Assembly (NCBI GenBank): GCA_037379345.1
Contig: CM074516.1
Coordinates: 248,001 to 312,000, forward strand
DNA length: 64,000 bases
Direction: 5' to 3'
Source: Perna viridis
Taxonomy: Eukaryota
The notes beneath the pieces were generated by a model. The model saw only the letters and a list, made by a program, of their open reading frames with translations. It did no database searches and had not been told where the DNA came from. The translations under genes and the position numbers were made by a program. This document shows positions 16,477-53,595 of the stretch, piece by piece. Every line of letters starts with the position of its first letter. Position 1 is the stretch's first letter.

Positions 16477-16941
16477 GGCTAGAAACCACTAATTCCACTT
16501 CCCATAGGCTTCTATGCTAATTTCACAATATTCAATTGCTTCTCTGGACTTTACTTTAACTTTAACCTGCAGAGGACTATATATCAGCATGATTCTACAT
16601 ATGTCAGCTCACAATCCTCAGAATGGCATGTGGGGTTAGCAGACTTGCAGTGCAGTACTGGTCACCGGAAGTGAAGGGTCTATAAATAGCATGGGAAATC
16701 CCAGTGTTTTCACAAGATAGGGGTATATTTAGAAATCATTATGGAGATTAGGCTTCACATCACAAGAAGCAAAATGCACCTATAAAATGTACAGAAATGT
16801 TTTTCCTTTAAGAAACTGTTTAAATTTTTTAAATGAGATGAGAACTTTTTTCACAGCACTATGAGGAACGGGTAATTTCTGCGTAGGACTATTTTTGCGT
16901 ACGTTCCAAATGCTCATTGGTTGAATTGGTGGTCTGTAACC
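16477..16941 (+). mobile_element. ~465-bp non-autonomous DNA transposon (Kolobok-like), copy 1
   Basis: Near-identical to 30815-31281 and 32155-32620; imperfect TIRs GGCTAGAAACCACTAATTCCAC / GTTGAATTGGTGGTCTGTAACC; flanked by TCAA on both sides. Confidence 0.85.
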
Positions 16942-17535
16942 TCAATACTCTCTGTTAATAAGTTGTATACTTAAAAAAAGGGTTTTCAAAAGATGAAAGA
17001 GATGGGGTTGCTCCTGAAATCTTTGATGTGAAGAGGAAACAATACTAACTCTTGGTAATCTAACTTAATTAGTCACAATCATTACCTAATTGAACAGATT
17101 CTTTAATTTCTATATCATTTTTATGTAGATTTTAGGCGTTCAGATATTTCTTTTTCTGCTATTGTAACTAATAAGTTTATTTTACAATTATTGAAAGTTT
17201 AGCTTGTTGATAAGAAATCCTATCTTGAGTGACTCTCCATATATTTTAATTCTGGCCACCTAAATCCTTCTCTTTGTCAATTAGTCAGTGCTATTGATCA
17301 CTATACAGGACAATATTATACTGACAAAAACAGCCCCATATTAAGGAAGTCATGTAAGTAATTAAATGGCATCATTAACTTTTTACCTGCTATTCTGCTG
17401 TGTCCTGTAATGAATGTGTTACCATGGTTACTGTAAAGTTTATAATCTGTGGTTTCTAAGAATATGATCTTGGTTACTTAGTTCTGTGACATTAAAACTA
17501 ACTGTGAGTAATGAGTCAACTGTAAACTGTAAGAA

Positions 17536-17714
17536 TCTTCTTGTTTCACCTCCTGTCTCCTTTTCTAGGATCTTTTTGTTTCACCTCTTGTCTCCTTTTC
17601 TAGGATCCTCTTGTTTCACCTCCTGTCTCCTTTTCTAGGATCTTCTTGTTTCACCTCTTGTCTCCTTTTCTAGGATCTTTTTGTTTCACCTCTTGTCTCC
17701 TTTTCTAGGATCTT
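17536..17714. repeat. Minisatellite, 35-bp pyrimidine-rich unit
   Basis: 5 copies of GGATCTTCTTGTTTCACCTCCTGTCTCCTTTTCTA. Confidence 0.92.
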
Positions 17715-29574: not shown

Positions 29575-29636
29575 ATGAAAGGGAAGATGTTCAGAAAAAG
29601 ACATTTACGAAATGGATAAATTCACAGCTCTCAAAG
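29575..29636 (+). CDS. DMD: Dystrophin exon 2 equivalent, CH1 start (DEREDVQKKTFTKWINSQLSK)
   Basis: TTTTCCAG acceptor, AAG|GTAAGT donor. 62 nt like human DMD exon 2; canonical QKKTFTKW actin-binding motif. Confidence 0.97.
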
Positions 29637-30814: not shown

Positions 30815-31281
30815 GGCTAAAAACCACTAATTCCACTTCCCATAGGCTTCTATGCTAATTTCACAATATTCAATGGCTTCTCTAGACTTTACCTTAACTT
30901 TAACCTGCAGAGGACTATATATCAGCATGATTCTACATATGTCAGCTCACAATCCTCAGAATGGCATGTGGGGTTAGCAGACTTGCAGTGCAGTACTGGT
31001 CACCGGAAGTGAAGGGTCTATAAATAGCATGGGAAATCCCAGTGTTTTCACAAGATAGGGGTATATTTAAAAATCATTATGGAGATTAGGCTTCACATCA
31101 CAAGAAGCAAAATGCACCTTTAAAATGTACAGAAATGTTTTTCCTTTCAGAAACTGTTTAAATTTTTTAAATAAGATGAGAGCTTTTTTCACAGCACTAT
31201 GAGGAACAGGGGTAATTTCTGCGTAGGACTATTTTTGTGTACGTTCCAAATGCTCATTGGTTGAATTGGTGGTCTGTAACC
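30815..31281 (+). mobile_element. ~465-bp non-autonomous DNA transposon (Kolobok-like), copy 2
   Basis: Near-identical to copies 1 and 3; flanks TTTA / TAAA. Confidence 0.85.
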
Positions 31282-32154: not shown

Positions 32155-32620
32155 GGCTAAAAACCACTAATTCCACTTCCCATAGGCTTCTATGCTAATT
32201 TCACAATATTCAATGGCTTCTCTGGACTTTACCTTAACTTTAACCTGCAGAGGACTATATATCAGCATGATTCTACATATGTCAGCTCACAATCCTCAGA
32301 ATGGCATGTGGAGTTAGCAGACTTGCAGTGCAGTACTGGTCACCAGAAGTGAAGGGTCTATAAATAGCATGGGAAATCCCAGTGTTTTCACAAGATAGGG
32401 GTATATTTAAAAATCATTATGGAGATTAGGCTTCACATCACAAGAAGCAAAATGCACCTATAAAATGTACAGAAATGTTTTTCCTTTCAGAAACTGTTTA
32501 AATTTTTTTAATAAGATGAGAGCTTTTTTCACAGCACTATGAGGAACAGGAGTAATTTCTGCGTAGGACTATTTTTGCGTACGATCAAATGCTCATTGGT
32601 TGAATTGGTGGTCTGTAACC
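32155..32620 (+). mobile_element. ~465-bp non-autonomous DNA transposon (Kolobok-like), copy 3
   Basis: Near-identical to copies 1 and 2; flanks TTAA / TAAA. Confidence 0.85.
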
Positions 32621-35825: not shown

Positions 35826-35918
35826 GCCCATAGACCAACAGTTAACAACTTATTTGCGGATCTGAAGGATGGTACACAGTTGTTATCATTGTTGGAAGTT
35901 CTAGGAGGCATGACCTTG
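35826..35918 (+). CDS. DMD: Dystrophin exon 3 equivalent (AHRPTVNNLFADLKDGTQLLSLLEVLGGMTL)
   Basis: TTCAG acceptor, TTG|GTAAGT donor. 93 nt like human exon 3; DLxDG-xxLL-xLLE CH1 motif. Confidence 0.96.
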
Positions 35919-36262
35919 GTAAGTGATTACTGAAAGTTCTAGGAAGGATGACCTTGGTAAGTGATTACTGAAAGTTCTAGGAAGGATGACCTTGGTAAGG
36001 GATAACTGAAAGTTCTAGGAAGGATGACCTTGGTAAGGGATAACTGAAAGTTCTAGGAAGAATGACCCACAGGTAAGTGATTACTGAAATTCTGGGAAGC
36101 ATGATTTTGGTAAGTGATTACTGGAAGTTCTGGGGGTCTGGTAAAGGACTACTGGAAATTCTTGGAGGCATGATCTTGTTACTTGTGATTACTTTAAGTT
36201 CAAAGAGGCATGACTCTGGTAAGTGATTACTGTTCATTTGTTAAGGCATGACCATGGTATGT
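35895..36262 (+). repeat. Donor-echo array of exon 3 (38-bp unit)
   Basis: About 10 decaying copies of GAAGTTCTAGGAGGCATGACCTTG|GTAAGTGATTACT. Confidence 0.92.
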
Positions 36263-36596
36263 TTTAAGTAATGCAGGTGCTTTGCAATTTTTATTTGTTT
36301 TAAGTAAGGTACAAATGTTGGATATCACATTCTTGAAGGAAGATAATTACTGTCAGATGATTACAAGGTGAGATAATCTAACTAATTGGTTTGAATGTAA
36401 AGAGTTCAGGTGAAGCAGAAAAGACTTCTCATAGGATTTTGAGGCTTAAAATTCCACTGGCCATGAATGTGTATGCCATGAAACGGGCAAACATTAAAAG
36501 AATTCATCATTTTCTCAACAAATTAACTCAGATTTGCTAATTTTAATAAAGATAATGATGGAAACTCATTAAAAAGACATATACTGCAAAACCTGT

Positions 36597-36757
36597 ATAA
36601 AAGGAGCCAGAAAGACTCATTTCTGTATCAGTATTTATAAAAGGAGCCAGAAAGACTCATTTCTGTATCAGTATTTATAAAAGAAGCCAGAAAGACTCAT
36701 TTCTGTATCAGTATTTATAAAAGGAGCTAGAAAGACTCATTTCTGTATCAGTATTTA
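36597..36757. repeat. Minisatellite, 40-bp unit
   Basis: 4 copies of ATAAAAGGAGCCAGAAAGACTCATTTCTGTATCAGTATTT. Confidence 0.93.
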
Positions 36758-37571
36758 TGTATTTTGAACCGTGGTAAACCAGAAACCTGTTTAATCAATT
36801 TGAAAGTCCAGAAATAACTTCCATTTAGATAGGTTTTACTATAACTACATAAAACTATATCATTTTCAGTTATACCCTTTTTTGTTTGATCATTAAACCC
36901 ATCTGTCTGTCTGTCTGTCTGTCAATTTGTCCATCTTGATGAGTAAATTTTGTCACAATTATGTCAGTTGCCAGTAGATTATCTAATATCAAGTATTTGT
37001 TTTGTGGGACTTTTTTCACTATATGGAACCAATAGGAGTATACCTAACATCTTCATTTGTATTTTATGACAACTTTGGATGTGGGTAGGTAGGCTAGTAT
37101 TTTATTAACTTTTCCTACTAAGACTCATTTTTTTCAAAAGAAATTGGATAGGAATATGGCTATCGAGTCAGTTAATAAAATGTGAATTATGAATTTCTCA
37201 AGAATTGCCTTGACTGATATAAAATATTAAACCCACAAACCCTTAATATGATGAGAATATTATTTTGAACAGTTTCCTGCTATCATGAGCAACCATGCTG
37301 AGGCCAGATGTTTTAGGCAAATAGTTATCTGCTCTCTAGTATAAGATATCATAGTGAGGTGCTAATGGTATCTATCCGTCTGTCTGTTCACCCACAAATC
37401 TTGTAAATCTTCACTGAAACTGCATGGTGGATTACTTCTATAGATTGTTCTTTTATGAAGTGTAAATATGCATATAAAACCATCATTTTGATTTTAGAAA
37501 TTCTGTACATGTTTTGTGACATTTAACTATTGGCTGGAGACATGTAGTATTCTTGTACCTTTGATATATAA

Positions 37572-37714
37572 GGGTTCTCAATAAGTTATAAAGTAGGTGG
37601 CTCCATTGATAACCAAACATTTTTTTTTAATTTAATTTTTTTTTGAGCAACAAAATAGCCGGCGCCAATGTCAAAGTAGACGGCAAAATTGCCGGGTGCT
37701 GGCATATAACCCTG
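37572..37714 (+). mobile_element. Internally deleted MITE, same family as 57321-58209
   Basis: Shares the GGTTCTCAATAAGT..AAAGTAGGTGGC left end and the GAGCAACAAAATAGC..GGCGCCAATGTCAAAGTAGACGGCAAAA right part. Confidence 0.75.
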
Positions 37715-38219
37715 TAAGTGGATTCTTTTGTTGTCCTGTCAATATTTATTTACAACTATTTCCATACTTAGTCACATTTTCCATCATAAATTACAAATAA
37801 TCTTTGTTTTTGTTTACCATTATAGCTTTTAGACATTCTTGCTCTCAGTGTTGTTGTTTGTGTAGTATTTTATCTAAAATATTGTGGTGTGAAAAAATTA
37901 AATCATTTTTATGTAACAGACTTATTAGATTTCATACCCAAGGTTGAATCAATTTTGTTTGCCTTGCAATTTCCATAGACAAAGTTTATGTTCTTTCTAT
38001 AAGATTTATGAAGGCATTTTTAAATTAACTATTTATGTATGTTCAGAAGGTTGAAATTTAATACTTTCTTCTGGTTTATTATTCAATTTTATTCTTTTTG
38101 GCTGAAAAATATTAGATTTTTCTACTAATGTATTTTTGTTCTGTGTTTATTTAATGTGAGACAAAATATACATTTGAAGGTCTTTTTAAATCTTTTAAGA
38201 CATTTTTTTGTATTTTCAG

Positions 38220-38300
38220 AGAAGAGAGAAAGGCAGACTGAGAGTGCATCACATCAACAATGTAAACCAAGCCATTGCTGTACTCAGTAATAACTATAAT
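38220..38300 (+). CDS. DMD: Dystrophin exon 4 equivalent (RREKGRLRVHHINNVNQAIAVLSNNYN)
   Basis: TATTTTCAG acceptor, AAT|GTAAGT donor. 81 nt, phase 0-0; resembles human EKGSTRVHALNNVNKAL. Confidence 0.95.
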
Positions 38301-38562
38301 GTAAGTTCACCAACAATATAAACTTTGCCATTGCTGTACTCAGTAATAAGTGTAATATAAGTTCATCAACAATGTAACTGCTATACTCAGTAATAACTAT
38401 AATATAAGTTCATGAACAGTGCAAACCAAGCCATATTTGTACTCAGTAATAACTATAATGTGAGTTCATCAACTATGTAACCTTAGTCATTGCTGTACTC
38501 AGTAATTACTATAATGTAAGTACATGAACAGTGCAAACCAAACCATTTATGTACTCAGTAAT
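38252..38562 (+). repeat. Donor-echo array of exon 4 (~56-bp unit)
   Basis: 5-6 copies of CATCAACAATGTAAACCAAGCCATTGCTGTACTCAGTAATAACTATAAT|GTAAGTT. Confidence 0.9.
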
Positions 38563-39975
38563 ATGAATTTTTGACAGATTGAAAATAACATATAATATGA
38601 CTTGTTATTATCTAGAATGTTTGTAATTTGAAAATTTGAAGCATTTTACAATTTTGTGCCTGTGTGAAAAGTCTTAAGCCGTAGTTTTGTCCATTACTCC
38701 TAAAGATCCTTTTATTCTTAGGTCTATCCATAACTCCCAGTGAAAACTATAGAAACAACATACAATAGCACAACTGTCTGTCTGTCTGTCTGTCTGTCTG
38801 TCATAAGACCTGATTACTTGTATTTTTTCATTGTATTTTGCACCCATTTTGCCTGCAGTTTACACTCTTGTGATCTTGTGATTGTAAATCTTTTCCATAG
38901 TACCTATGTTAAGATTACAGAAGGTTCAGGATTTCCCAGATCATTTTCATAAAATATTGTAAAAAATATGGATTGTCATCAAGTAGTATAAACAGGTCAT
39001 TCCTTCCTTATGTTTCTTCACAGTGCTGTCTGTCTGCCTGTTCTTCTATCCATCGCCTTTCCTTTTGCTTATCTATATTTTTTTAACCCTCTGAAATCAA
39101 AATCTTTCATCATTACTGTCTGTCTGTCTGTGTAAGATCTTTTTGTTTTCTTGTTTATTTTTTCATCCTTATACTCATCCTTCAACAGATTTTCTCACTT
39201 AGTTTTTTCTGGCAATTAAAAATATCATCACAGATAACTAAAATTGGTCAAAACATGACTTATATGGCACTTTTTTGTTTTTGGAATAATTTTATATTAG
39301 TCCTTCAAATATAGTAATTTTCAAAACTAAATGTATTTTGATAAGCAACATCCTGAATTCCTGTTATGACTGGAATTATTGTATGTGACTCATTATTTCA
39401 CCAAATTGCTCCAAATTATCTGTTTCCTTTTGCTATGTAGTTGTACAGTACAAAATGGTGTCAATCTGTATGAAATTACTCTAACATTCAGTTTTGTTGG
39501 ATAGAATTACTGTCAATATCACATTATTTGTGCATTTTGGATAGGTAATTGGCCACTTATACCGAATGTATAGACATTCCTTATGAATGTCTATTTCCCA
39601 GACTTTAAACTGTTAAACAAGTTGCCATGTTGGAAGGGAGCTTTAAATGGACATTATTAGAAATTGTTTATAGGTTTTTGTCTGACAGTTTTAAACAAAA
39701 AAATAATAATTTTTGCAATTTCATGCAGAAAACCCCAAAACCCAACATTTTGCTTTAATTGATATAGAGTTTATTAGTTTACAGTGAGGAGTAAATTCAT
39801 TTAGACCGAATTTTTGCTCTTTATCATGTACCAGTAGTATAAAATCTAAAATAACAAACCCAATTATTCATCACTTTTGTATTGTAAGGACTTGTTAAGG
39901 TGATATTCTTGGGTTTCACTCCTAAATAAACTGTTGTAAATATCACCAAATAGTAACATTAAGTACATGAAGAAT

Positions 39976-40293
39976 CATGCAGTGGTTGATAAGAAGTGTG
40001 AAGCCATCCAGTATCCCCCATCATGCAGAGGTTGATAAGAAGTGTGAAGCCCTCCAGTATCCCCCATTATGCACAGGTTGATAAGAAGTGTGAAGCCATC
40101 CAGTATCTCCCATCATGCACAGGTTGATAAGAAGTGTGAAGCCCTCCAGTATCTCCCATCATGCACAGGTTGATAAGAAGTGTGAAGCCATCCAGTATCT
40201 CCCATCATGCACAGGTTGATAAGAAGTGTGAAGCCATCCAGTATCTCCCATCATGCACAGGTTGATAAGAAGTGTGAAGCCATCCAGTATCTC
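39976..40293. repeat. Minisatellite, 46-bp unit
   Basis: 7 copies of TCATGCACAGGTTGATAAGAAGTGTGAAGCCATCCAGTATCTCCCA. Confidence 0.95.
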
Positions 40294-40845
40294 CTATTAG
40301 AACCAATTCAAAGTATGAGGTTAGGTTACAGTATTCTTCCATGTATACCACGCTTTTTTCAACTTGTTCTTTTTTTCCAGGGGTGGGGGACAGTGTGTGC
40401 ACGATATGCACCAAAACAGTGAGTTTCTAGATTTTTTTTCTGGAGTCATAATTTTTGGGAATGAGAATAGAAGTTGTCAATGGAAGACAACTTGGAGCCA
40501 TTTTGTATTTTTGAGAACAATTTTACTGCTATTTAATAGATTTAATACATTTCCATCAATGCTGTTTTCTTGAATTTCATAGTTTGTACAAAAAACCTCG
40601 ACTGGCTTATTATGTTTCTCTCAATACATGCCATCCTAATTATAATTTCTTCACCTGTGTGCAGTGGTCTGTTGAATACACAATAATGGGAGAGCCAACC
40701 TGTCCTTGGGTCCATTGTCATTTAATTATCAAAAGTTCAATTTAAAAGGTGAAAACAATTGTCACTAATCCTTTAATCCACTTGATGAACTGTTTCCTGA
40801 TGTCAAATATCAATACACAAGCTTGGTAAATTTAAACATCTTTTT

Positions 40846-42082
40846 TTAGCTCACCTTGCCAAAGGCCATGTGAGCTATTGCCATCACTTGGCGACTGTCG
40901 TAGTTGTTAACAATTTTTCAAAACTCTTCTCCTCTGACACTATTTGACCAATTGGAACTAAACATGGTATGATTATTCCTTGGTGTATCCTGCATAGAAC
41001 AGATGTGGGGATTTTTGATCCGTAGAAAAACATAGCCGTTACTTAAAATAGAACATAGGAGTCAGACAGTAGTTTTTCGCATATATATTACCAAAACCAT
41101 TAGGTTTAACCAAATTCTAACGGGGAGGGGTAGGGGTAGGTTTAAAGCGTTCAGCATGATGAGATCTATCTGTATTCAAATTTTCATTTCAATCTGTTAA
41201 GCCATGTTGGAGTTATTGCCCTTTTTCGATTTTTTTTGCTATTTTTAATGTTATTTCTTTCAAATATTTTCTCCTCTGACACCACTTGACCAATTGGAAT
41301 CAAACTTGGTATAGAGCTGATGTGGGGATTTTAGATCCGTAGAAAAACATGGCCGCTGTTACTAAAAATAGAACAAAAGGGGTCTGACAGTAGTTTTTCA
41401 CATATACACGTATCTCCAAAACCAACAGATTTAGCCAAATTTTGACAGGGTTAAAGTGTTAAGCATGATGAGATCTATCTGTGGTCAAATTTTCATTTTC
41501 AGTCTGTTAAGCCATGTTGGAGTTATTGCCCTTTTTGGACGTTTTTTTGCTATTTTTAATGTTAGTTCTTTCAAAAACCTTCTCCTGACACTACTTGACC
41601 AATTAGAACAAATTTGGTATGAATGTTCCTTGGGGTATCCTGCATAGAACTGTTGTGGGGATTTTTGATCCGTCAAAAAGCATGGCTGCTGTTATTAAAA
41701 ATAGAACAAAGAGAGCAGACAGTAGATTTTTGCATATATCTCCAAAACCATTAAGTTTAGCAAAATTATTTCTCCAGCTCAAATGACCCTTATTATATGG
41801 CCTTCAAAAGTCTTCAGGGATCAAAGTTGTCAGGTGACTCCTTGTAAGAGTTATTGCCCTTGAAAGATGTGAAATGACAATATTTTTTTTACAATTTTTA
41901 GCCAATATCTTGAAAACTCTAATGTATAGAAAGAAACTTTTTATTGCTATAATGATCCTTAAGATAGTCCTACCAAAGTCTTATTGAGTCAAAATTGTTG
42001 GACAACTCCTTGTTAAATTTATTGCCCTTGAAAGACGAACTTTAACAAGGTGAGTGATTCAGGCCTTGGGAGCCTCTTGTTT
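40846..42082 (+). mobile_element. Complete HINE (non-autonomous Helentron) with internal tandem subrepeats
   Basis: 5' TTTTTAGCTCACCT...GTGAGCTA; 3' AGGTGAGTG plus hairpin AGGC..GCCT and CTTGTTT; T-rich flanks; three internal ~310-350-bp repeats. This matches the architecture described for bivalve HINEs. Confidence 0.85.
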
Positions 42083-42529
42083 ATAAACAGTCAGACATGA
42101 TACCATTGTTTTAGTGAAATACCTGATTTGCATATGAACAGGAAATGTAAACATTTAAGCTGACTCTTTGAATGGATCCAGTACATTGCTGTATTTTAAT
42201 CAATAAATGACTTGCAAACCCAGGGAAACATAAACAAAATACTTTTATTTGAAAGATTAATGATGAAAGGATACCATTTCATGGAAATTACTGGAATCCT
42301 TTCAACTCAATGTGTTCTTCTGCTGGTGATTTTTCCTCGCTTCTGAGTGTGCGTTTTACATGGAAACTAACTTTTTTTGTTGATCTCCTTTGCCAAGAAG
42401 GGGATGCCTGATATACACAATTGCGCTTAATACACAGAAGAATACGGTAAATCTGATCTGTAGAGAACAGTCTGGTAGGAAATATTTTCAACTAAACTGC
42501 TTGACTATATTTTCCTAGATATGACTGTT

Positions 42530-42800
42530 ATTATACACCCTGCTTGAAAGGTAGGAGGTATATAGTGATCATGGTGTTCATCTGTCCACTGTTGTAATCT
42601 GCTACTCCTCTGAAACCACTGAATTTGATGATACTTATTCACACAATCTTTATTACATAATCCAATTGTGCACCTTCTATTTTGATTTTCCATCTGAATG
42701 TTTAAATCACTTCTGGCATGGTGCCCTTTATGGTTTACTGGGGAGGGGAAGGGGATGTCTGGGTATCCCCAAGTGACCTTTGCTCACAGTTTTCTAGTTA
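42530..42800 (+). mobile_element. Degraded short HINE-like element
   Basis: TTATACACCC...GGTATATAG start, CTCCTCTGAAACCACTG core, terminal GTGAC..CTCAC hairpin + CTAGTT; related to 53818-54185. Confidence 0.5.
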
Positions 42801-43627
42801 AAATTGTAACTTTCTGAATGATTTATGGTTATTTAGAAAGTTGACAAAAGAACTTTTGTACTTTTTACAGGCTTAGCATTCTTCTCACTTTCCCACAAAT
42901 GACTACTGAGGTATAATTTTGTTTGTCAAGAAATTGAACTTTTATTATCCGTCTCAGTAGGGGTTCCGACCTTCCACATTTGTTTTAGATTTATTGATTT
43001 ATGTTTTAAGAATGCTCCTAAATCAATGACAAATACTTAAATGTGCCTTTTAGATATTTGAGGACTTAAAAATGAAATGTGACATTACAAAAATGTACAC
43101 ATATTTTGATAGAAGCCTCTGTTTAAAAACATTTAGACTTAAAGCCTAATCTTGTTTGATGATATTGCAATTTTCTATGACACAACTTGTTACTATATCG
43201 GAAAGAGGATTTGTCAGTTGTTTTTGGACCAAAAAACTTGTGTTGAAATTGAAACATGATGTTTTTATTGTGAGAAAGTGGAATTGAATTATAAATTATG
43301 GATTTACTTGACTTGCATTACTTTGAGTAAACACATTTTCAAGGATTTGTGTTTCCAAATTGCATGTTTAAATCTAGAATAACATTAATTTTACATTTAA
43401 ATATGAATTAGTGACAAGTAATATGCATTTACAATGTCATTGTTTTGTAACAGTGATGTCATTTAAAGTCAACTTTTGACACATTAAGATTATATCACTT
43501 AAATTTGGTGTTAGAAACTTTCTTAACTGTTATTTATCTCAATTTACAAAATTAAATCAACTTAACATGATACGTACAAAATAAGATACATTATATGTAA
43601 GTACAAATACTTATATCATTCAGTTAA

Positions 43628-44775
43628 TTACACCTATGTCCTTCGAGAGTTGTAGCATCTAGTACTGACACCGTGTTTAGACAGATCATTACACCCATGT
43701 CCTTCATGAGAGTTGTAGCATCTAGTACTGACACTGTGTTTAGACAGATCATTACACCCATGTTCTTCTCGAGAGTTGTAGCATCTAGTACTGACACCGT
43801 GTTTAGACAGATCATTACACCCATGTTCTTCACGAGAGTTGTAGCATCTAGTACTGACACCGTGTTTAGACAGATCATTACACCCATGTTCTTCACGAGA
43901 GTTGTAGCATCTAGTACTGACACCGTGTTGAGACAGATCATTACACCCATGTCCTTTCAAGAATTGTAGCATCTAGTACTGACACCGTGTTTAGACAGAT
44001 CATTACACCTGTGTCCTTCAAGAATTGTAGCATCTAGTACTGACACCGTGTTTAGACAGATCATTATACCCATGTCCTTCATGAGAGTTGTAGCATCTAG
44101 TACTGACACCGTGTTGAGACAAATCATTACACCATTGTCCTTCAAGATTTGTAGCATCTAGTACTGACACCATGTTGAGACAGATCATTACACCCATGTC
44201 CTTCGAGAGTTGTAGCATCTATTACTGACACAGTGTTGACACATATCATTACACCCATGTCCGTTGAGAAGTGTAGCACCTTGTACTGACACAAAGTAGA
44301 GACATTATTACACCCATGTCCCTTGAGAAGTAAGTATAGCACCTAGTACTGACACGAAGTGGAGACATTATTACACCCATGTCCCATGAGAAGTGTAACA
44401 CCTAGTACTGACACAAAGTGGAGACATTACATCCATGACTCCCTTGAGAAGTGTAGCACCTAGTTGAGACATTAATACATCCTTGTGTCTCAACAGTTGT
44501 AACATCTAGTACTGACACCATGTCTAGACAGATCATTACTCCTTTGTCCCGCAAGACGGTAGCATCTAGTACTGACACAGATTCTTGCACCCTTGTCCCT
44601 GGAATGGTGCAGCACCTAGTTGAGACAGTTAAGTGCACCCATGTCCTTTGAAAGATATAGTATCTAGTACTGACAACTTGTGGAGACACCATGTTGAGAC
44701 AATTAAGAGCACCCTTAACCCTTAATAGGCATAGCACCATATCTGGATAGTTTATCACACCTGTGACCCACATGA
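43628..44775. repeat. Minisatellite, 62-63-bp unit, progressively degenerate toward the 3' end
   Basis: GAGAGTTGTAGCATCTAGTACTGACACCGTGTTTAGACAGATCATTACACCCATGT..; source of ORFs 43624-44785. Confidence 0.93.
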
Positions 44776-45000
44776 GCCATAGCATAAAGAACTGATACCA
44801 TGATTTTCTGTTTAGTTCACCAGAAATATCTCAAAATTTATGCATTAAAAGACACCTTAAAGGAATTTTAATTATGTTGGGCATACAACAACAACTCTGT
44901 TCAGTCTTAGTATTGATAGGATAATACCCCTTAAGATGCTTGTTTCAATATCTACGTTATAAACAAAAGTTTTTGATGGCAATTTTTTTTGTCCTTTCAG

Positions 45001-45093
45001 ATAAAGTTGGTGAACATCAGTAGTAATGACATTGTAGATGGGAATCAGAAATTGACATTAGGTCTGGTGTGGAGTATCATACTTCACTGGCAG
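45001..45093 (+). CDS. DMD: Dystrophin exon 5 equivalent ([31 protein letters not shown])
   Basis: CCTTTCAG acceptor, CAG|GTATGT donor. 93 nt like human exon 5; DIVDGN-KLTLGL-W-IILHWQ motif. Confidence 0.97.
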
Positions 45094-45300
45094 GTATGTC
45101 ATGGTAAAAGGGGGAAGGGGAGTGGTGTGGAATATCATAATTCACTGGCAGGTATGCCATGATAAAGAGGAGGGGACTTGGATGGAGTATCATACTTCAC
45201 TGGCAGGTATGTCATGGTAGAAGGGGGAAGGGGAGTGGTATGGAGTATCATACTTCACTGGCAGGTGTGTCAAGGTAAAAAGGGGGATGGATGTGGAACA
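45065..45300 (+). repeat. Donor-echo array of exon 5 (55-58-bp G-rich unit)
   Basis: 4 copies of TGGAGTATCATACTTCACTGGCAG|GTATGTCATGGTAAAAGGGGGAAGGGG. Confidence 0.93.
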
Positions 45301-45475
45301 TCAACTTACTTATTTTCTCTTCAACTTTGTTATGTCATTAAACTGTAAAATTTCAATTGTGTTGGTCAGCATGTTTTTATTGGTCAGTTCTAATTTATTT
45401 GGTCTATAAAACTTATATTGAGCATTGTAATAGGGTTATTCTATTATTATTGACTGTAATTATGATTTTTACCAG

Positions 45476-45567
45476 GTGAAGGATGTAATGAAGGATTTGA
45501 TGGATGATTTAAGACAGACTAATCTTGAGAGGACCTTACTTAACTGGTGTAGACAATCTACTGAAGG
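45476..45567 (+). CDS. DMD: Dystrophin exon 6a ([31 protein letters not shown])
   Basis: TTTTTACCAG acceptor, GG|GTATGT donor. 92 nt; QTN-E-LL-W-RQST typical of the dystrophin/utrophin CH1-CH2 junction. Confidence 0.95.
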
Positions 45568-45818
45568 GTATGTAATCCCTTTCATCAAATAGTCTTATCA
45601 TGAAATTCATATTCTGCCAATAGTTATTAAGTCAGTCAAAATAATTTTGTTTGTTGTGTAGCTGAGTTGTATTGTATCCTTTATTGAAGTTTCTTTATTG
45701 TTACAATCTTAATTTCTAGAAGAATATTTATATGGTGATATACATTGCTTTTTTTGTCCTTATTATGTTGTTTACTTTAGATATATGTATTTATCTTCCT
45801 TTAATTGTATCTTACCAG

Positions 45819-45899
45819 GTACCAAGATGTGGATATAAGAAATTTTACTAACAGCTGGAGAGATGGACTTGGTTTTAATGCTCTTATCCACCACTTCAG
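45819..45899 (+). CDS. DMD: Dystrophin exon 6b (YQDVDIRNFTNSWRDGLGFNALIHHFR)
   Basis: CTTACCAG acceptor, CAG|GTATGA donor. 81 nt; NFT-SW-DGL-FNALIH CH2 motif; 92+81=173 nt, the size of human exon 6. Confidence 0.96.
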
Positions 45900-46652
45900 G
45901 TATGATGCTAAGGATGTAATGCTCTCATCATCACTCAGGTATAATGCTGAGCAATTAATGCTTTCACCCAACACTTCAGGTATGATGCTGAGGATTTAAT
46001 ACTCTCACCAAACACTTTAGGTATGATGCTGTGGATTTAATGCTCTAACCCAATGCTTCAGGTATGATGCTGAAGATGTAATGCTCTCATCCACCACTTC
46101 AGGTATGATGCTAAGGAATTAATGCTCTCTTCCACCTCTTTAGGTATGATGCCGAGGATGTAATGCTCTCATCCATCAATTCAGGTATGATGCTAAGGAA
46201 GTAATGCTCATATCCACCACTTCAGGTATGATGCTGAAGATTTAAAGCTGTCATTCAACACTTCAGGTATGATGCTGAGGATGTAATGCTCTAACCCAAC
46301 GCTTCAGGTATGATGCTGAGGATGTAATGCTCTAACCCACCACTTCGGGTTTGATGCTGAGGATTTAATGCTCTCATCCATCAATTCAGGTATGATGCTA
46401 AGGAATTAATGCTCTCATCCACCACTTTAGGCATGATGCTTAGGATTTAATGCTCTAACTCAATACTTCAGGTATGATGCTCAGGATGTAATGCTCTCAT
46501 CCACCACTTCAGGTATGGTGCTGTAGATGTAATGCTCTCATCTAACACTTCAGGTATGATGCTGAGGATGTAATGCTCTCATCCAACACTTCAGGTATGA
46601 TGCTGATGATTAAATCCCCTCAGCCACCACTTCAGGCATGATGTTGAGGATT
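45875..46652 (+). repeat. Donor-echo array of exon 6b (41-bp unit)
   Basis: About 19 copies of TTAATGCTCTCATCCACCACTTCAG|GTATGATGCTGAGGA. Confidence 0.95.
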
Positions 46653-46892
46653 TGTTCTTTTCTCTTGTGATTGCTGGCACTATCAAGGGAGATCATTGAT
46701 AGTGTTAATAGATTATGCAGTTTCCTAATACTGTAGTAAGTGTATAAGAACTATCAACTTGAAGTAAAAAAATAATTAGAAATAACACAATATGAAAATA
46801 AAAAAGGTTGTTATGGTTTTTGATATTTTCTCAAAATATTCTTAGCTCCTTTTGCAACAGTTTTCAATCAGCATTTTTTTGTACAATTACAG

Positions 46893-47008
46893 ACCAGACT
46901 TGTTTATATATGAAGATATACTGAACATGGACAAAGAAACAAGACTGAACCATGCATTTGATGTAGCAGAGAAATCTCTGAACATAGATCGACTTCTAGA
47001 TGCTGAAG
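46893..47008 (+). CDS. DMD: Dystrophin exon 7 equivalent (RPDLFIYEDILNMDKETRLNHAFDVAEKSLNIDRLLDAE)
   Basis: TTACAG acceptor, AAG|GTATGG donor. 116 nt, phase 2-1; RPDLF...RL-HAF-A...LLD-E CH2 motif. Confidence 0.95.
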
Positions 47009-48003
47009 GTATGGGTAGCCTACAATAACTGTATATAAACTTACAGAACCTAACAGTGTGGGGAAAAATGACTACAATTACTGTATATAAACTTACAGCG
47101 CCTGAAGGTGTGGGGAAAATGACTACAATTACTGTATATAAACTTACAGAACCTAACAGTGTGGGGAAAAATGACTACAATTACTGTATATAAACTTACA
47201 GTGCCTGATGGTGTGGGGAAAATGACTACAATTACTGTATATAAACTTACAGAACCTAACAGTGTGGGGAAAAATGACTACAATTACTGTACATAAACTT
47301 ACAGAGCCTGACAATGTGGGGAAAAATGACTACAATTACTGTATATAAACTTAAAGAACCTAACAGTGTGGGGAAAAATGACTACAATTACTGTATATAA
47401 ACTTATAGAGCCTGATGGTGTGGGGAAAAATGACTACAGTTACTGTATATAAACTTAAAGAACCTAACAGTGTGGGGAAAAATGACTACAATTACTGTAT
47501 ATAAACTTACAGAACCTAACAGTGTGGGGAAAATGACTACAATTACTGTATATAAACTTACAGAGCCTGACAATGTGGGGAAAAATGACTACAATTACTG
47601 TATATAAACTTACAGCGCCTGACAGTGTGGGGAAAATGACTACAATTACTGTATATAAACTTACAGAACCTGACGGTGTGGGGAAAAATGACTACAATTA
47701 CTGTATATAAACTTACAGAACCTGACAGTGTGGGGGAAAATGACTACAATTACTGTATATAAACTTACAGTGCCTGACAATGTGGGGAAAATGACTACAA
47801 TTACTGTATATAAACTTACAGAACCTAACTGTGGGGAAAATGACTACAATTACTGTATATAAACTTACAGAACCTGACAGTGTGGGGAAAAATGACTACA
47901 ATTACTGTATATAAACTTACAGAGCCTGACGGTGTGGGAAAAATGACTACAATTACTGTATATAAACTTACAGAGCCTGACAATGTTGGGAAAATGACTA
48001 CAA
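46993..48003 (+). repeat. Donor-echo array of exon 7 (~52-bp unit)
   Basis: About 19 copies; unit CTTACAGCGCCTGAAG|GTGTGGGGAAAATGACTACAATTACTGTATATAAA aligns to junction CTTCTAGATGCTGAAG|GTATGGGTAGCCTACAATAACTGTATATAAA. Confidence 0.85.
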
Positions 48004-48239
48004 ATGACTAGTGTCTGTGAAAACATTTATTTGTTTCATTTCTAGTGTCTTTGTAAATGTGTATATTTTGTGTCATTTCTAGTGTCTTTGACAGAGAAAT
48101 CTTAACTGAGTTTGTCTGGGATTATTTAGTCTCCACAGAGATGTCTTACATGAGGGTGTTTGAGATTTCCTAGTGTGCAAGACAGAGAAATCTTGCACAA
48201 GAGAAATCAGACACTTAGGTGTCTATGATTTCATTTGTA

Positions 48240-52225: not shown

Positions 52226-52319
52226 AAGTTTGCAATTTTGAAGGTGTTGTATTTTTCAACTAAGTTAATGAACTTGTGAATTTTACTTATGGTATTTGTG
52301 ATTTGTGACTTTTTTTCAG

Positions 52320-52492
52320 ATGTAAATGTTGATAACCCTGATAAGAAGTCAGTGATGATGTATTTGATGTGTTTCTTCCAAGTTTTACCACACTCCAACA
52401 TCCCTGATACTGAGTTACCTCCCCCTCAGCCTACACTGGTCCCCACCCCTACTGAGAAGTTCCAGTTTGCTGAACATGTCAAGAAATCAGAG
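52320..52492 (+). CDS. DMD: Dystrophin exon 8 equivalent, end of CH2 plus proline-rich hinge 1 (DVNVDNPDKKSVMMYLMCFFQVLPHSNIPDTELPPPQPTLVPTPTEKFQFAEHVKKSE)
   Basis: TTTTTTTCAG acceptor, GAG|GTAAGG donor. 173 nt, phase 1-0; PDKKS-MY...FQVLP motif. Confidence 0.95.
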
Positions 52493-52644
52493 GTAAGGTT
52501 CACTTGAATTTTATCCCTATGACTTCACTGTCGTCTGAGTCAATTTCTTTCCAGATTTGTTGTTGTCTCTAACATATCCATTCTTGTTATAGAGGTTTAT
52601 TTGCTATATAAACCTTTGCCAGACTAAGGACTGAACCCCTCCTT

Positions 52645-53595
52645 TATAGCTCACCTGGCCATAGGCCATATGAGCTATTGCCATAACTTGGTGTCCCTTG
52701 TCTGTTGTCATCGTTAACAGTTTTTCAAACATCTTCTCCTCTGAAACTACTGAATAGATGTGCAAGAAACTTATAATGATTGTTCCTTAGGGTATCCTGC
52801 ACAAAATTACAGTTTGGATTTTTGATCGGTTAAAAACATGGTCGCTGTTACTAAAAATAGAACATAGGGGTCAGACAGCAGATTTCTGCATGTATCTCCA
52901 AAACCTTTAGGTGAAACCAAATTTTGACTTGGGTGAAAGTATTCAGCATGATGAGATCTATCTGGTCAAGTTTTGGTGAAAATTTGTCAACCCATGTTGG
53001 AGTTATTACCCTTTTTTTACATTTTTGCTGTTTTTGTTACTTTTTAAAATCTTCTCCTCAGAAACTACTGTACAGAATTCAATAAAAGTTGGTATTTTTG
53101 GTTTTTTAGGGTATCCTTAACAAAATGAATGTCTGGATTTTTTATTGGTTAAAAAACATTGCCGCCTTTACTAAAAAAAGAACATAGCAGTCGTACAGTA
53201 TACATAGTTTTTTTGCATATATCTCCATAACCGTTAGGTTTTACCAACATCTTTCAATTGCTGAAATATCCTTATTATAAGGCCTACAAAGTCTTCAAGG
53301 ATCAAAGTTGTTAGACGATTCCATGTAAGGGTTATTGCCCTTGTGGGGTGAAGAAAATGACTTTTTTTACAGTTTTCAGCCTATATCTTGAAAACTATGA
53401 TAGATAGAATGAAACTTTCAATTGATGGAATGATTTTTATTATAAGGCCTACAAGTTTTCAGGCAACTCCATATAAGAGTTATTTCCTTTGAAAGGCAAA
53501 AAATTGTTTTTTACAGTTTTCAGTCAATATCTTGAAAACTATAGTAGATTGAATGAAACTTCCGATTGATGAAAGGATCCTCATCATAAGTCGTA
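52645..53595 (+). mobile_element. 3'-truncated HINE, same family as 40846-42082
   Basis: TAGCTCACCTGGCCATAGGCCATATGAGCTATTGCCAT start and shared internal blocks (GTTACTAAAAATAGAACATAGGGGTCAGACAG). Confidence 0.8.

What the first reader, a model, noticed from the sequence alone, without database searches (positions are those of the whole stretch)
35895..48003. Systematic 'splice-donor echo' arrays: five consecutive-region dystrophin exons each spawn a tandem repeat of their own exon-end plus 5' splice site
Seen: exons 3, 4, 5, 6b and 7 are each immediately followed by an array (units of 38, 56, 55-58, 41 and ~52 bp, unrelated to each other). In each, the first unit straddles the real exon/intron junction and copies extend only into the intron. 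Exons 2, 6a and 8 lack one, and no array duplicates an acceptor junction. Other minisatellites in the window occur only about once per 3-4 kb, so five donor-anchored arrays look far from random. Inference: either a mutational process targets 5' splice junctions (e.g. co-transcriptional R-loop or pausing-associated breaks with slippage, or RNA-templated repair), or the ladders are retained because they act as decoy or extra U1-binding sites that tune splicing or suppress premature polyadenylation in long introns. I do not know of this as a described gene-wide pattern.
Basis: partly seen in the sequence, partly recalled or inferred. Interest (0 to 1): 0.9.

Follow-up and report, generated by a model that had tools for sequence, protein, structure and literature searches.

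The report
Splice-donor minisatellites in a dystrophin gene
Four, probably five, of eight neighbouring exons of an invertebrate dystrophin gene are followed by a tandem repeat copied from their own last bases plus the splice signal. The cell uses only the first copy, so this is an unusually dense cluster of a known and apparently harmless kind of repeat.

Summary
Exons 3, 4, 5 and 6b of a dystrophin/utrophin-type gene are each followed by a minisatellite. Its first unit is the exon's last 23-49 bases plus the GT donor. The array after exon 7 shares only about 6 exon bases plus the donor with the junction, so it is marginal.

Chance placement predicts 0.23 donor-spanning arrays in this gene stretch, or 0.46 when weighted for base composition. 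Four or five are seen.

RNA contigs from three studies join every exon at the first donor only. Forty of 48 extra copies keep GT, and many match the real site exactly. Nearly all would add a frameshift or a stop if used. Splice-site columns are no better conserved than other columns.

This is the known exon-boundary minisatellite: amphioxus "mirages" and the human F7 intron 7 repeat, where the most upstream donor wins. This scan has already noted and twice followed up the same pattern elsewhere in this genome. I found three more in an unselected fn3-gene sample.

Units are GC-richer than intron DNA. That favours donor-side seeds and explains part of the donor bias. A donor-targeted mutation process or a decoy function is neither shown nor excluded. 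New member of a known kind; moderate interest.

The parts
29575..29636 (+). Exon 2 (62 bp), donor AAG|GTAAGT, no array
   Evidence: translation EREDVQKKTFTKWINSQLSK. No tandem repeat at the donor.
35826..35918 (+). Exon 3 (93 bp), CH domain, donor TTG|GTAAGT
   Evidence: One search gives the translation and splice signals. Weak Pfam CH match.
35896..36131 (+). Array 1: 38 bp x6.2, with degenerate copies to about 36260. The unit is 23 exon bases plus 15 intron bases.
   Evidence: All five TRF-called extra copies keep GT, and two of them carry the identical 9-mer TTG|GTAAGT.
38220..38300 (+). Exon 4 (81 bp), donor AAT|GTAAGT
   Evidence: The RNA contigs' loose end before 45001 equals 38271-38300, and that 30-mer is unique in the window.
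38252..38563 (+). Array 2: 56 bp x5.7. The unit is 49 exon bases plus 7 intron bases.
   Evidence: Two of four extra copies keep GT.
45001..45093 (+). Exon 5 (93 bp), CH domain, donor CAG|GTATGT
   Evidence: CH, E 9.7e-5. RNA joint 45093>45476 in three runs.
45065..45287 (+). Array 3: 58 bp x3.9. The unit is 29 exon bases plus 29 intron bases. It fills about half of the 382-base intron.
   Evidence: All three extra copies keep GT. Tiled by independent DNA contigs.
45476..45567 (+). Exon 6a (92 bp), no array
   Evidence: RNA joint 45567>45819. Solved-structure hits are utrophin and dystrophin only.
45819..45899 (+). Exon 6b (81 bp), donor CAG|GTATGA
   Evidence: RNA joint 45899>46893.
45874..46653 (+). 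Array 4: 41 bp x19. The unit is 26 exon bases plus 15 intron bases. It fills about three quarters of the 993-base intron.
   Evidence: Sixteen of 17 extra copies keep GT, and 11 carry the identical 9-mer.
46893..47008 (+). Exon 7 (116 bp), donor AAG|GTATGG
   Evidence: The RNA loose end behind 47008 equals the start of exon 8.
47003..48003 (+). Array 5: 52 bp x19, called by TRF from 47020. Its homology to the junction reaches back only to about 47003.
   Evidence: Fourteen of 19 copies keep GT in register, and 5 have G at position -1. The link to the exon is marginal.
52318..52493 (+). Exon 8 (about 176 bp), donor GAG|GTAAGG, no array

Best explanation
These are exon-boundary minisatellites of the 'mirage' / F7-IVS7 type.

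Origin (inferred). In a genome where minisatellites cover a quarter of this region, short segments of 30-60 bases are often duplicated in tandem, by replication slippage or unequal exchange, and then expand. A seed inside an exon destroys the gene and is lost. A seed that straddles the exon end and the donor is harmless, because every extra copy falls into the intron.

Splicing (shown at contig level). The splicing machinery takes the first, most upstream donor.

Direction of copying. The exon ends are ancient: their protein sequence matches dystrophin/utrophin, and by my recollection of the human gene their exon sizes match too. The arrays are young. So the arrays were copied from the exons, not the reverse.

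Why donors. Donor-side junctions are favoured over acceptor-side ones partly because arrays here grow from GC-richer seeds. Donor-spanning segments are about 40% GC and acceptor-spanning ones, which carry the pyrimidine tract, about 31%.

Function. The extra donors are silent passengers with no function of their own.

Open point. Composition does not explain the rest of the local excess of four to five arrays in eight donors. I attribute it to a high local rate of array birth plus selection of this window from a genome-wide scan. This is the weakest step.
For: - Arrays and exon overlap.
- Only the first donor appears in RNA contigs of three runs from three studies, including a 15.4-kb mRNA contig.
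- Extra donors are often identical 9-mers to the real one. Nearly all would give a frameshift or an in-frame stop if used.
- Splice-site columns are not specially conserved: 4 mismatches seen vs 3.4 expected, 3 vs 6.4, 2 vs 3.6, 8 vs 16.7 and 15 vs 9.5. GT is kept in 40 of 48 copies, about what the overall unit identity predicts.
- Array units average 38.5% GC against 31.3% for other DNA. None comes from seeds below 28% GC. Relative propensity is 2.6 at donor junctions and 0.86 at acceptor junctions.
- The same kind of array occurs at three of 93 exon-like frames in unselected fn3-gene loci.
- Known precedents: mirages, which do not disturb splicing (PMC3087553), and F7 IVS7, where 5'-to-3' scanning selects the most upstream site (PMC1557585).
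Against: - Even with GC weighting only 0.46 donor-spanning arrays are expected, against 4-5 seen. Neutral seeding alone does not reproduce the cluster without appeal to ascertainment or a locally raised rate.
- Contigs cannot exclude rare transcripts that use later donors, especially if nonsense-mediated decay removes them.
- The GC-propensity estimate rests on only 26 arrays from one window.
- The unselected sample shows 3 donor-spanning arrays against about 1 expected by my own rough arithmetic, and 0 at acceptors. That is too small to fix the genome-wide rate or the donor:acceptor ratio.
Confidence: 0.6

Rival explanations
1. A mutational process raises the birth rate of tandem duplications right at 5' splice junctions. 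Candidates are polymerase pausing or U1 binding at donors in germline-transcribed genes, causing fork stalling and template switching. On this view donor arrays exceed any composition-matched expectation.
For: - Four to five donor arrays are seen against 0.23-0.46 expected.
- All eight junction arrays in the sequence I hold are at donors and none at acceptors.
- Donor-motif ladders exceed the reversed motif genome-wide: GGTAAGT 1363 vs 618 and CAGGTAAGT 103 vs 37.
Against: - Array units show no coding-strand G excess (16 of 31 positive).
- Unit borders are scattered 15-49 bases upstream and 7-33 bases downstream of the junction rather than at it.
- The GGTATGT ladder is not enriched (1973 vs 1851).
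- The acceptor-type ladder TTTTCAGG is enriched as much as donor motifs (223 vs 69). However, several listed matches read CAG|GT and so could be donor arrays.
- Acceptor arrays are noted elsewhere in this genome and in amphioxus.
- The window was chosen for its arrays.
Confidence: 0.2
2. The ladders are kept by selection because extra U1-binding sites help. They might strengthen recognition of the upstream exon, or suppress premature cleavage and polyadenylation in AT-rich introns.
For: - Forty of 48 extra copies keep GT, and many are identical to the real donor.
- The F7 work suggests consecutive sites favour the most upstream one (PMC1557585).
- The introns are AT-rich.
Against: - Splice-site columns are no better conserved than the rest of the unit. 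In array 5 they are the most variable columns.
- Two arrays sit in short introns of 382 and 993 bases, which need no such protection.
- Exons 2 and 8, which precede long introns, have none.
- The L029 array has mostly lost GT.
- An inverted copy of a junction array sits in another intron of the same gene, where it cannot act as a donor.
Confidence: 0.12
3. The cluster is chance in a minisatellite-rich region, or an assembly artefact.
For: Arrays cover 26% of the window. The window was picked from a scan of many windows.
Against: - P(>=4) is 4.5e-5 to 8e-4 per such region.
- The same pattern turns up in unselected loci.
- Copies have diverged from each other (74-91% matches).
- Independent DNA contigs tile arrays 3 and 4.
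Confidence: 0.05

Closest known systems
Amphioxus 'mirages' (Adh3, globin genes BflGb6 and BflGb9)
   Same: Minisatellite-like tandem duplications whose unit spans an exon-intron boundary. Units run from tens to about 160 bases. Many copies keep the AG/GT signals, and normal splicing is undisturbed (PMC3087553).
   Different: The host is apparently not a cephalochordate. Here four to five neighbouring donors of one gene carry arrays. Both boundary types are described in amphioxus, whereas only donor arrays occur in the sequence I hold. Length instability was not tested here.
Human F7 intron 7 37-bp VNTR
   Same: The first element spans the exon-intron boundary. The real donor is followed by identical pseudo-sites that stay silent, and only the most upstream site is used (PMC1557585; compare).
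   Different: F7 is a single locus with 5-8 copies (copy number from my own knowledge). Here there are several loci per gene and up to 19 copies. Whether the pseudo-sites can function when the first site is removed has not been tested here.
Recursive splice sites (ratchet points)
   Same: Units of array 4 read YAG|GTATGA, a juxtaposed acceptor-like and donor-like motif. Another note on this window raised this reading.
   Different: The intron is only 993 bases long. No RNA joint ends at any internal copy. The motif is simply the copied exon end CAG plus the donor.
Intron gain by tandem duplication of an AGGT-containing segment (Rogers model, cited in PMC3087553)
   Same: A tandem duplication copies splice signals, and the duplicated part is spliced out.
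   Different: No new intron is made here. The copies lie in a pre-existing, anciently placed intron.

Membership tests
Exon-boundary minisatellite ('mirage' type) | Head-to-tail repeat with a unit of tens of bases | tested here: met
   periods 38, 56, 58, 41 and 52, with 3.9 to 19 copies and 74-91% matches.
Exon-boundary minisatellite ('mirage' type) | The unit spans an exon-intron boundary and includes the splice signal | tested here: met
   met for arrays 1-4, with 23-49 exon bases plus GT. Marginal for array 5, with about 6 exon bases.
Exon-boundary minisatellite ('mirage' type) | Regular splicing is not disturbed | tested here: met
   contigs of three RNA runs join exons at the first donor only. 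Rare isoforms cannot be excluded with contigs.
Exon-boundary minisatellite ('mirage' type) | Copy number is unstable or polymorphic | tested here: inconclusive
   short-read contigs of another sample break inside the arrays, so copy number cannot be read.
F7 IVS7-type pseudo-donor VNTR | Pseudo-sites are identical or nearly identical to the real 5' splice site | tested here: met
   identical 9-mers in arrays 1, 2, 3 and 4 (for example 11 copies of CAG|GTATGA).
F7 IVS7-type pseudo-donor VNTR | Only the most upstream site is used | tested here: met
   joints at 45093>45476 and 45899>46893. Loose ends at 38300 and 47008 continue into the next exon.
F7 IVS7-type pseudo-donor VNTR | Pseudo-sites are functional when the first site is removed | not testable with these tools
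   Needs minigene mutagenesis.
Recursive splice sites | Stepwise removal of a long intron through internal YAG|GT sites | tested here: not met
   The intron is 993 bases long, and no joint reaches an internal copy.
Dystrophin/utrophin gene | N-terminal tandem calponin-homology domains with a dystrophin-type linker | tested here: met
   Pfam CH matches on exons 3, 5, 6b and 7, all below the curated cut-off because each exon was scanned singly. Exon 6a hits only utrophin and dystrophin among solved structures, E 2.5e-7 to 7e-5, at the homologous residues. Exon sizes 62, 93, 81, 93, 92+81 and 116 compare with human DMD 62, 93, 78, 93, 173 and 119; the human sizes are from my own knowledge.
Dystrophin/utrophin gene | Full-length architecture (spectrin repeats, WW, EF-hand, ZZ) | not tested
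A 15.4-kb mRNA contig covers these exons.

The most novel reading that the evidence does not exclude
In this lineage, exon-intron junctions, and donors above all, are true hotspots for minisatellite birth, beyond what composition and tolerance explain. The cause would be transcription- or splicing-coupled events in the germline. If so, the genome holds many hundreds of natural 'donor ladders', a built-in large-scale experiment on 5' splice site choice and a steady source of new exon ends and introns.
Probability: 0.2. Interest if true: 0.75.

Novelty: new member of a known kind. Interest (0 to 1): 0.42.

Why it matters
A single repeat of this kind in human F7 served as the model that showed 5' splice sites are chosen by first-come scanning. 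A genome with many such arrays offers hundreds of natural replicates of that experiment. Here they include four to five in a row in one conserved gene, with units of different length, strength and frame. The arrays also inflate short introns: they make up half to three quarters of introns 5 and 6b. They can supply raw material for shifted exon ends or new introns. For annotation they are a practical hazard, because gene predictors can pick a later copy of the donor. Working out whether the excess at donors is mutational or merely tolerated would say something general about how transcription and splicing shape repeat birth.

Tried and rejected
- Wider exon sample. I planned to fetch several hundred exons through Pfam searches of the window's own genome. 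The best Pkinase loci turned out to be intronless genes and a tandem gene cluster.
- Full-length dystrophin. Searching 1.84 billion representatives with exon 7 returned only fragments, so the rest of the gene could not be mapped.
- Motif ladders genome-wide. Counts are per match and are dominated by a few large arrays. GGTAAGT and CAGGTAAGT are enriched 2.2- and 2.8-fold over the reversed motif, but GGTATGT is not. The acceptor-type TTTTCAGG ladder is enriched 3.2-fold but overlaps CAG|GT donors. I treat all of this as suggestive only.
- Selection on the decoys. Per-column variation shows none.
- R-loop signature. There is no coding-strand G excess in the arrays.
- General link between arrays and donor-like motifs. 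Non-junction arrays carry GTAAG, GTATG or GTGAG about as often as random segments.
- Cañestro 2002, the first mirage paper, is not held. I cite it only through PMC3087553.
- The protein atlas was busy three times, so I have no check of my own on the organism.
- A literature search for the pattern in bivalves found nothing on point.
I redid it from references.


Full report
**What is there**

The window is AT-rich, about 32% G+C, and full of minisatellites. With period 15 or more and at least 2.5 copies there are 31 arrays covering 26% of the bases.

On the + strand lies the 5' part of a dystrophin/utrophin-type gene. I read eight exons from the sequence:

| Exon | Coordinates |
|---|---|
| e2 | 29575-29636 |
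| e3 | 35826-35918 |
| e4 | 38220-38300 |
| e5 | 45001-45093 |
| e6a | 45476-45567 |
| e6b | 45819-45899 |
| e7 | 46893-47008 |
| e8 | about 52318-52493 |

- All have AG...GT borders. The end of e6a is corrected by one base from the printed sequence.
- Scanned singly, exons 3, 5, 6b and 7 give calponin-homology matches.
- Exon 6a, the linker between the two CH domains, matches only utrophin and dystrophin among solved structures, at the homologous residues.
- Exon 7 matches actinin, utrophin and dystrophin.
- The exon sizes equal or nearly equal those of human DMD exons 2-8, with exon 6 split in two. The human sizes are from my own knowledge.

**The observation**

Tandem Repeats Finder places arrays directly behind exons 3, 4, 5, 6b and 7.

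- Arrays 1-4. Reading the sequence and aligning the units shows that these arrays begin 23, 49, 29 and 26 bases before the exon end. Each unit is 'exon end + GT donor + 7 to 29 intron bases'.
- Array 5. It begins 12 bases after the donor. A local alignment links the junction to the unit over 27 columns, of which only about 6 bases are exonic. Six of 2000 shuffles and 1 of 182 control segments reach that score. I count it as probable but marginal.
- Exons 2, 6a and 8 have no such array, and no array in the window spans an acceptor.

The clustering is nevertheless real. I collapsed the arrays to single units and re-seeded the 15 arrays of this gene stretch at random:

| Seeding model | Expected donor-spanning arrays | P(>=4) | P(>=5) |
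|---|---|---|---|
| Uniform | 0.23 | 4.5e-5 | - |
| GC-weighted | 0.46 | 8e-4 | 5.5e-5 |

The window was chosen because of the arrays, so these figures overstate the surprise genome-wide.

**Are the extra donors used?**

I laid contigs of three RNA runs from three studies, plus one DNA run of another sample, on 44950-48100.

- Joints run 45093>45476, 45567>45819 and 45899>46893.
- The letters before 45001 equal 38271-38300. The letters behind 47008 equal 52318-52347. Both 30-mers are unique in the window.
- So at all four donors that could be checked (e4, e5, e6b, e7), only the first copy is in the assembled transcripts. One of these transcripts is a 15.4-kb contig.
- Contigs cannot show rare forms.
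- Many later copies are 9-mers identical to the real site. Nearly every one would add a frameshift or run into a stop. The single exception is an in-frame +39 site in array 4.
- The DNA contigs of the other sample tile array 3 and parts of array 4, so the arrays are not an artefact of this assembly.

**Signs of selection or of a special mutation process**

- Within the arrays, the nine splice-site columns vary about as much as the others: 4 mismatches vs 3.4 expected, 3 vs 6.4, 2 vs 3.6, 8 vs 16.7 and 15 vs 9.5. GT survives in 40 of 48 extra copies, roughly what the overall identity predicts. That does not look like maintenance of decoys.
- Arrays show no G-over-C excess on the coding strand (16 of 31 positive).
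- Arrays away from junctions carry donor-like pentamers about as often as random segments.
- Unit borders are scattered around the junction rather than at it.

One regularity did appear. Array units are GC-richer (38.5%) than the remaining DNA (31.3%). None comes from seeds below 28% GC, while 40-46% GC seeds are over-represented four-fold. Donor-spanning 45-mers average about 40% GC, giving a relative propensity of 2.6. Acceptor-spanning ones, which carry the pyrimidine tract, average about 31% and a propensity of 0.86. Composition alone therefore predicts a roughly three-fold donor-over-acceptor bias and part of the enrichment, but not all of it.

**Beyond the window**

The window is C6:248001-312000 of a 723-Mb assembly.

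- Thirty loci around fn3 matches, mostly a titin-like gene with short introns, gave 70 kb with 93 exon-like open frames and 10 arrays.
- Three of the ten arrays are donor-spanning and none is acceptor-spanning:
  - 48 bp x4.9, with 15 exon bases;
  - 30 bp x10.2, with 22 exon bases and GTGAGT;
  - 35 bp x2.9, with 24 exon bases.
- About one donor-spanning array is expected there by my own rough arithmetic, so this sample is only suggestive. It puts the rate near 3% of donors.
- Genome-wide motif ladders, compared with the reversed motif, gave:

| Motif | Ladder matches | Reversed motif |
|---|---|---|
| GGTAAGT | 1363 | 618 |
| CAGGTAAGT | 103 | 37 |
| GGTATGT | 1973 | 1851 |
| TTTTCAGG | 223 | 69 |

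- These are match counts dominated by big arrays, so I take them as weak support that splice-motif ladders of both kinds are common.
- First-stage notes of this scan list the same pattern in many other genes of this genome, and some acceptor arrays too. Those notes are unchecked leads. Follow-ups on other loci reached the same reading as mine.

**What is known**

[quoted passage not shown] They occur at both boundary types, have an unclear origin and do not affect normal splicing (PMC3087553).
- The human F7 gene has a 37-bp VNTR whose first element spans the exon 7/intron 7 boundary. Its pseudo-sites are functional but silent, because the most upstream site is chosen by 5'-to-3' scanning (PMC1557585).
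- The arrays here meet the testable defining features of both.
- What is new is the host, which is apparently not a cephalochordate. The local density is also new: four to five neighbouring donors in one anciently conserved gene.

**Verdict**

It is a new member of a known kind.

- Best reading, about 0.6: tolerated by-products of a very active minisatellite-forming genome. They are silent because the first donor wins, and donor-biased partly through composition.
- About 0.2: a donor-targeted mutation process.
- About 0.1: a U1-recruiting function.

Both rivals remain open for the unexplained part of the excess.

No N runs were met, and no step needed referral.

Noticed in passing
L021:834-1177 and L029:573-814 (titin-like gene, C13:30.81 and 30.84 Mb): A junction array copied from an fn3 exon end (CTAAGAAACCAATTG|GTAAGG...) has a homologous array in inverted orientation about 27 kb away in another intron of the same gene. 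Such arrays can therefore be moved or duplicated as blocks.
   Followed up: partly
window 17535-17714: A 35-bp x5 array whose unit looks like a 3' splice site: a pyrimidine run followed by TTTTCTAG|G. It lies on the gene's strand, 12 kb upstream of exon 2. No exon is shown behind it, so it could be an acceptor-type junction array of an unannotated upstream exon, or chance.
   Followed up: no
window 52643-52697: A 54-base piece in intron 8 matches at least 40 places in the genome at 90-96% identity. It is a short dispersed element.
   Followed up: no
window 16483-16671, 30821-31009, 32161-32349: The same 63-codon open frame (KPLIPLPIGFYANFTIFN...) occurs three times on the + strand. It is a dispersed repeat present three times in this gene's upstream region and intron 2.
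   Followed up: no
G000 C6:22858357-22920325: At least 25 near-identical kinase-domain open frames of 248 codons lie in tandem on the minus strand, spaced about 2-4 kb apart. This is a large recent tandem gene cluster.
   Followed up: no
G000 C1:8270560-8274325: A 47-bp array of about 3.8 kb with at least 80 units reading GGAG|GTATGT. It may be another very long donor-type array.
   Followed up: no
G000 C7:1164463-1165668 and C7:1490013-1491217: The same CAGGTAAGT-bearing 38-bp array occurs twice, 325 kb apart, with identical matched strings. This looks like a segmental duplication.
   Followed up: no
window 45856-45887: A 32-base stretch of exon 6b matches long (6.5-7.4 kb), deeply covered RNA contigs of another gene with two differences. 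This is presumably a paralogous CH-domain gene.
   Followed up: no
window, all arrays: Minisatellite units are GC-richer (mean 38.5%) than the surrounding DNA (31.3%), and none has a unit below 28% GC. Either seeding or survival of arrays depends on composition.
   Followed up: partly
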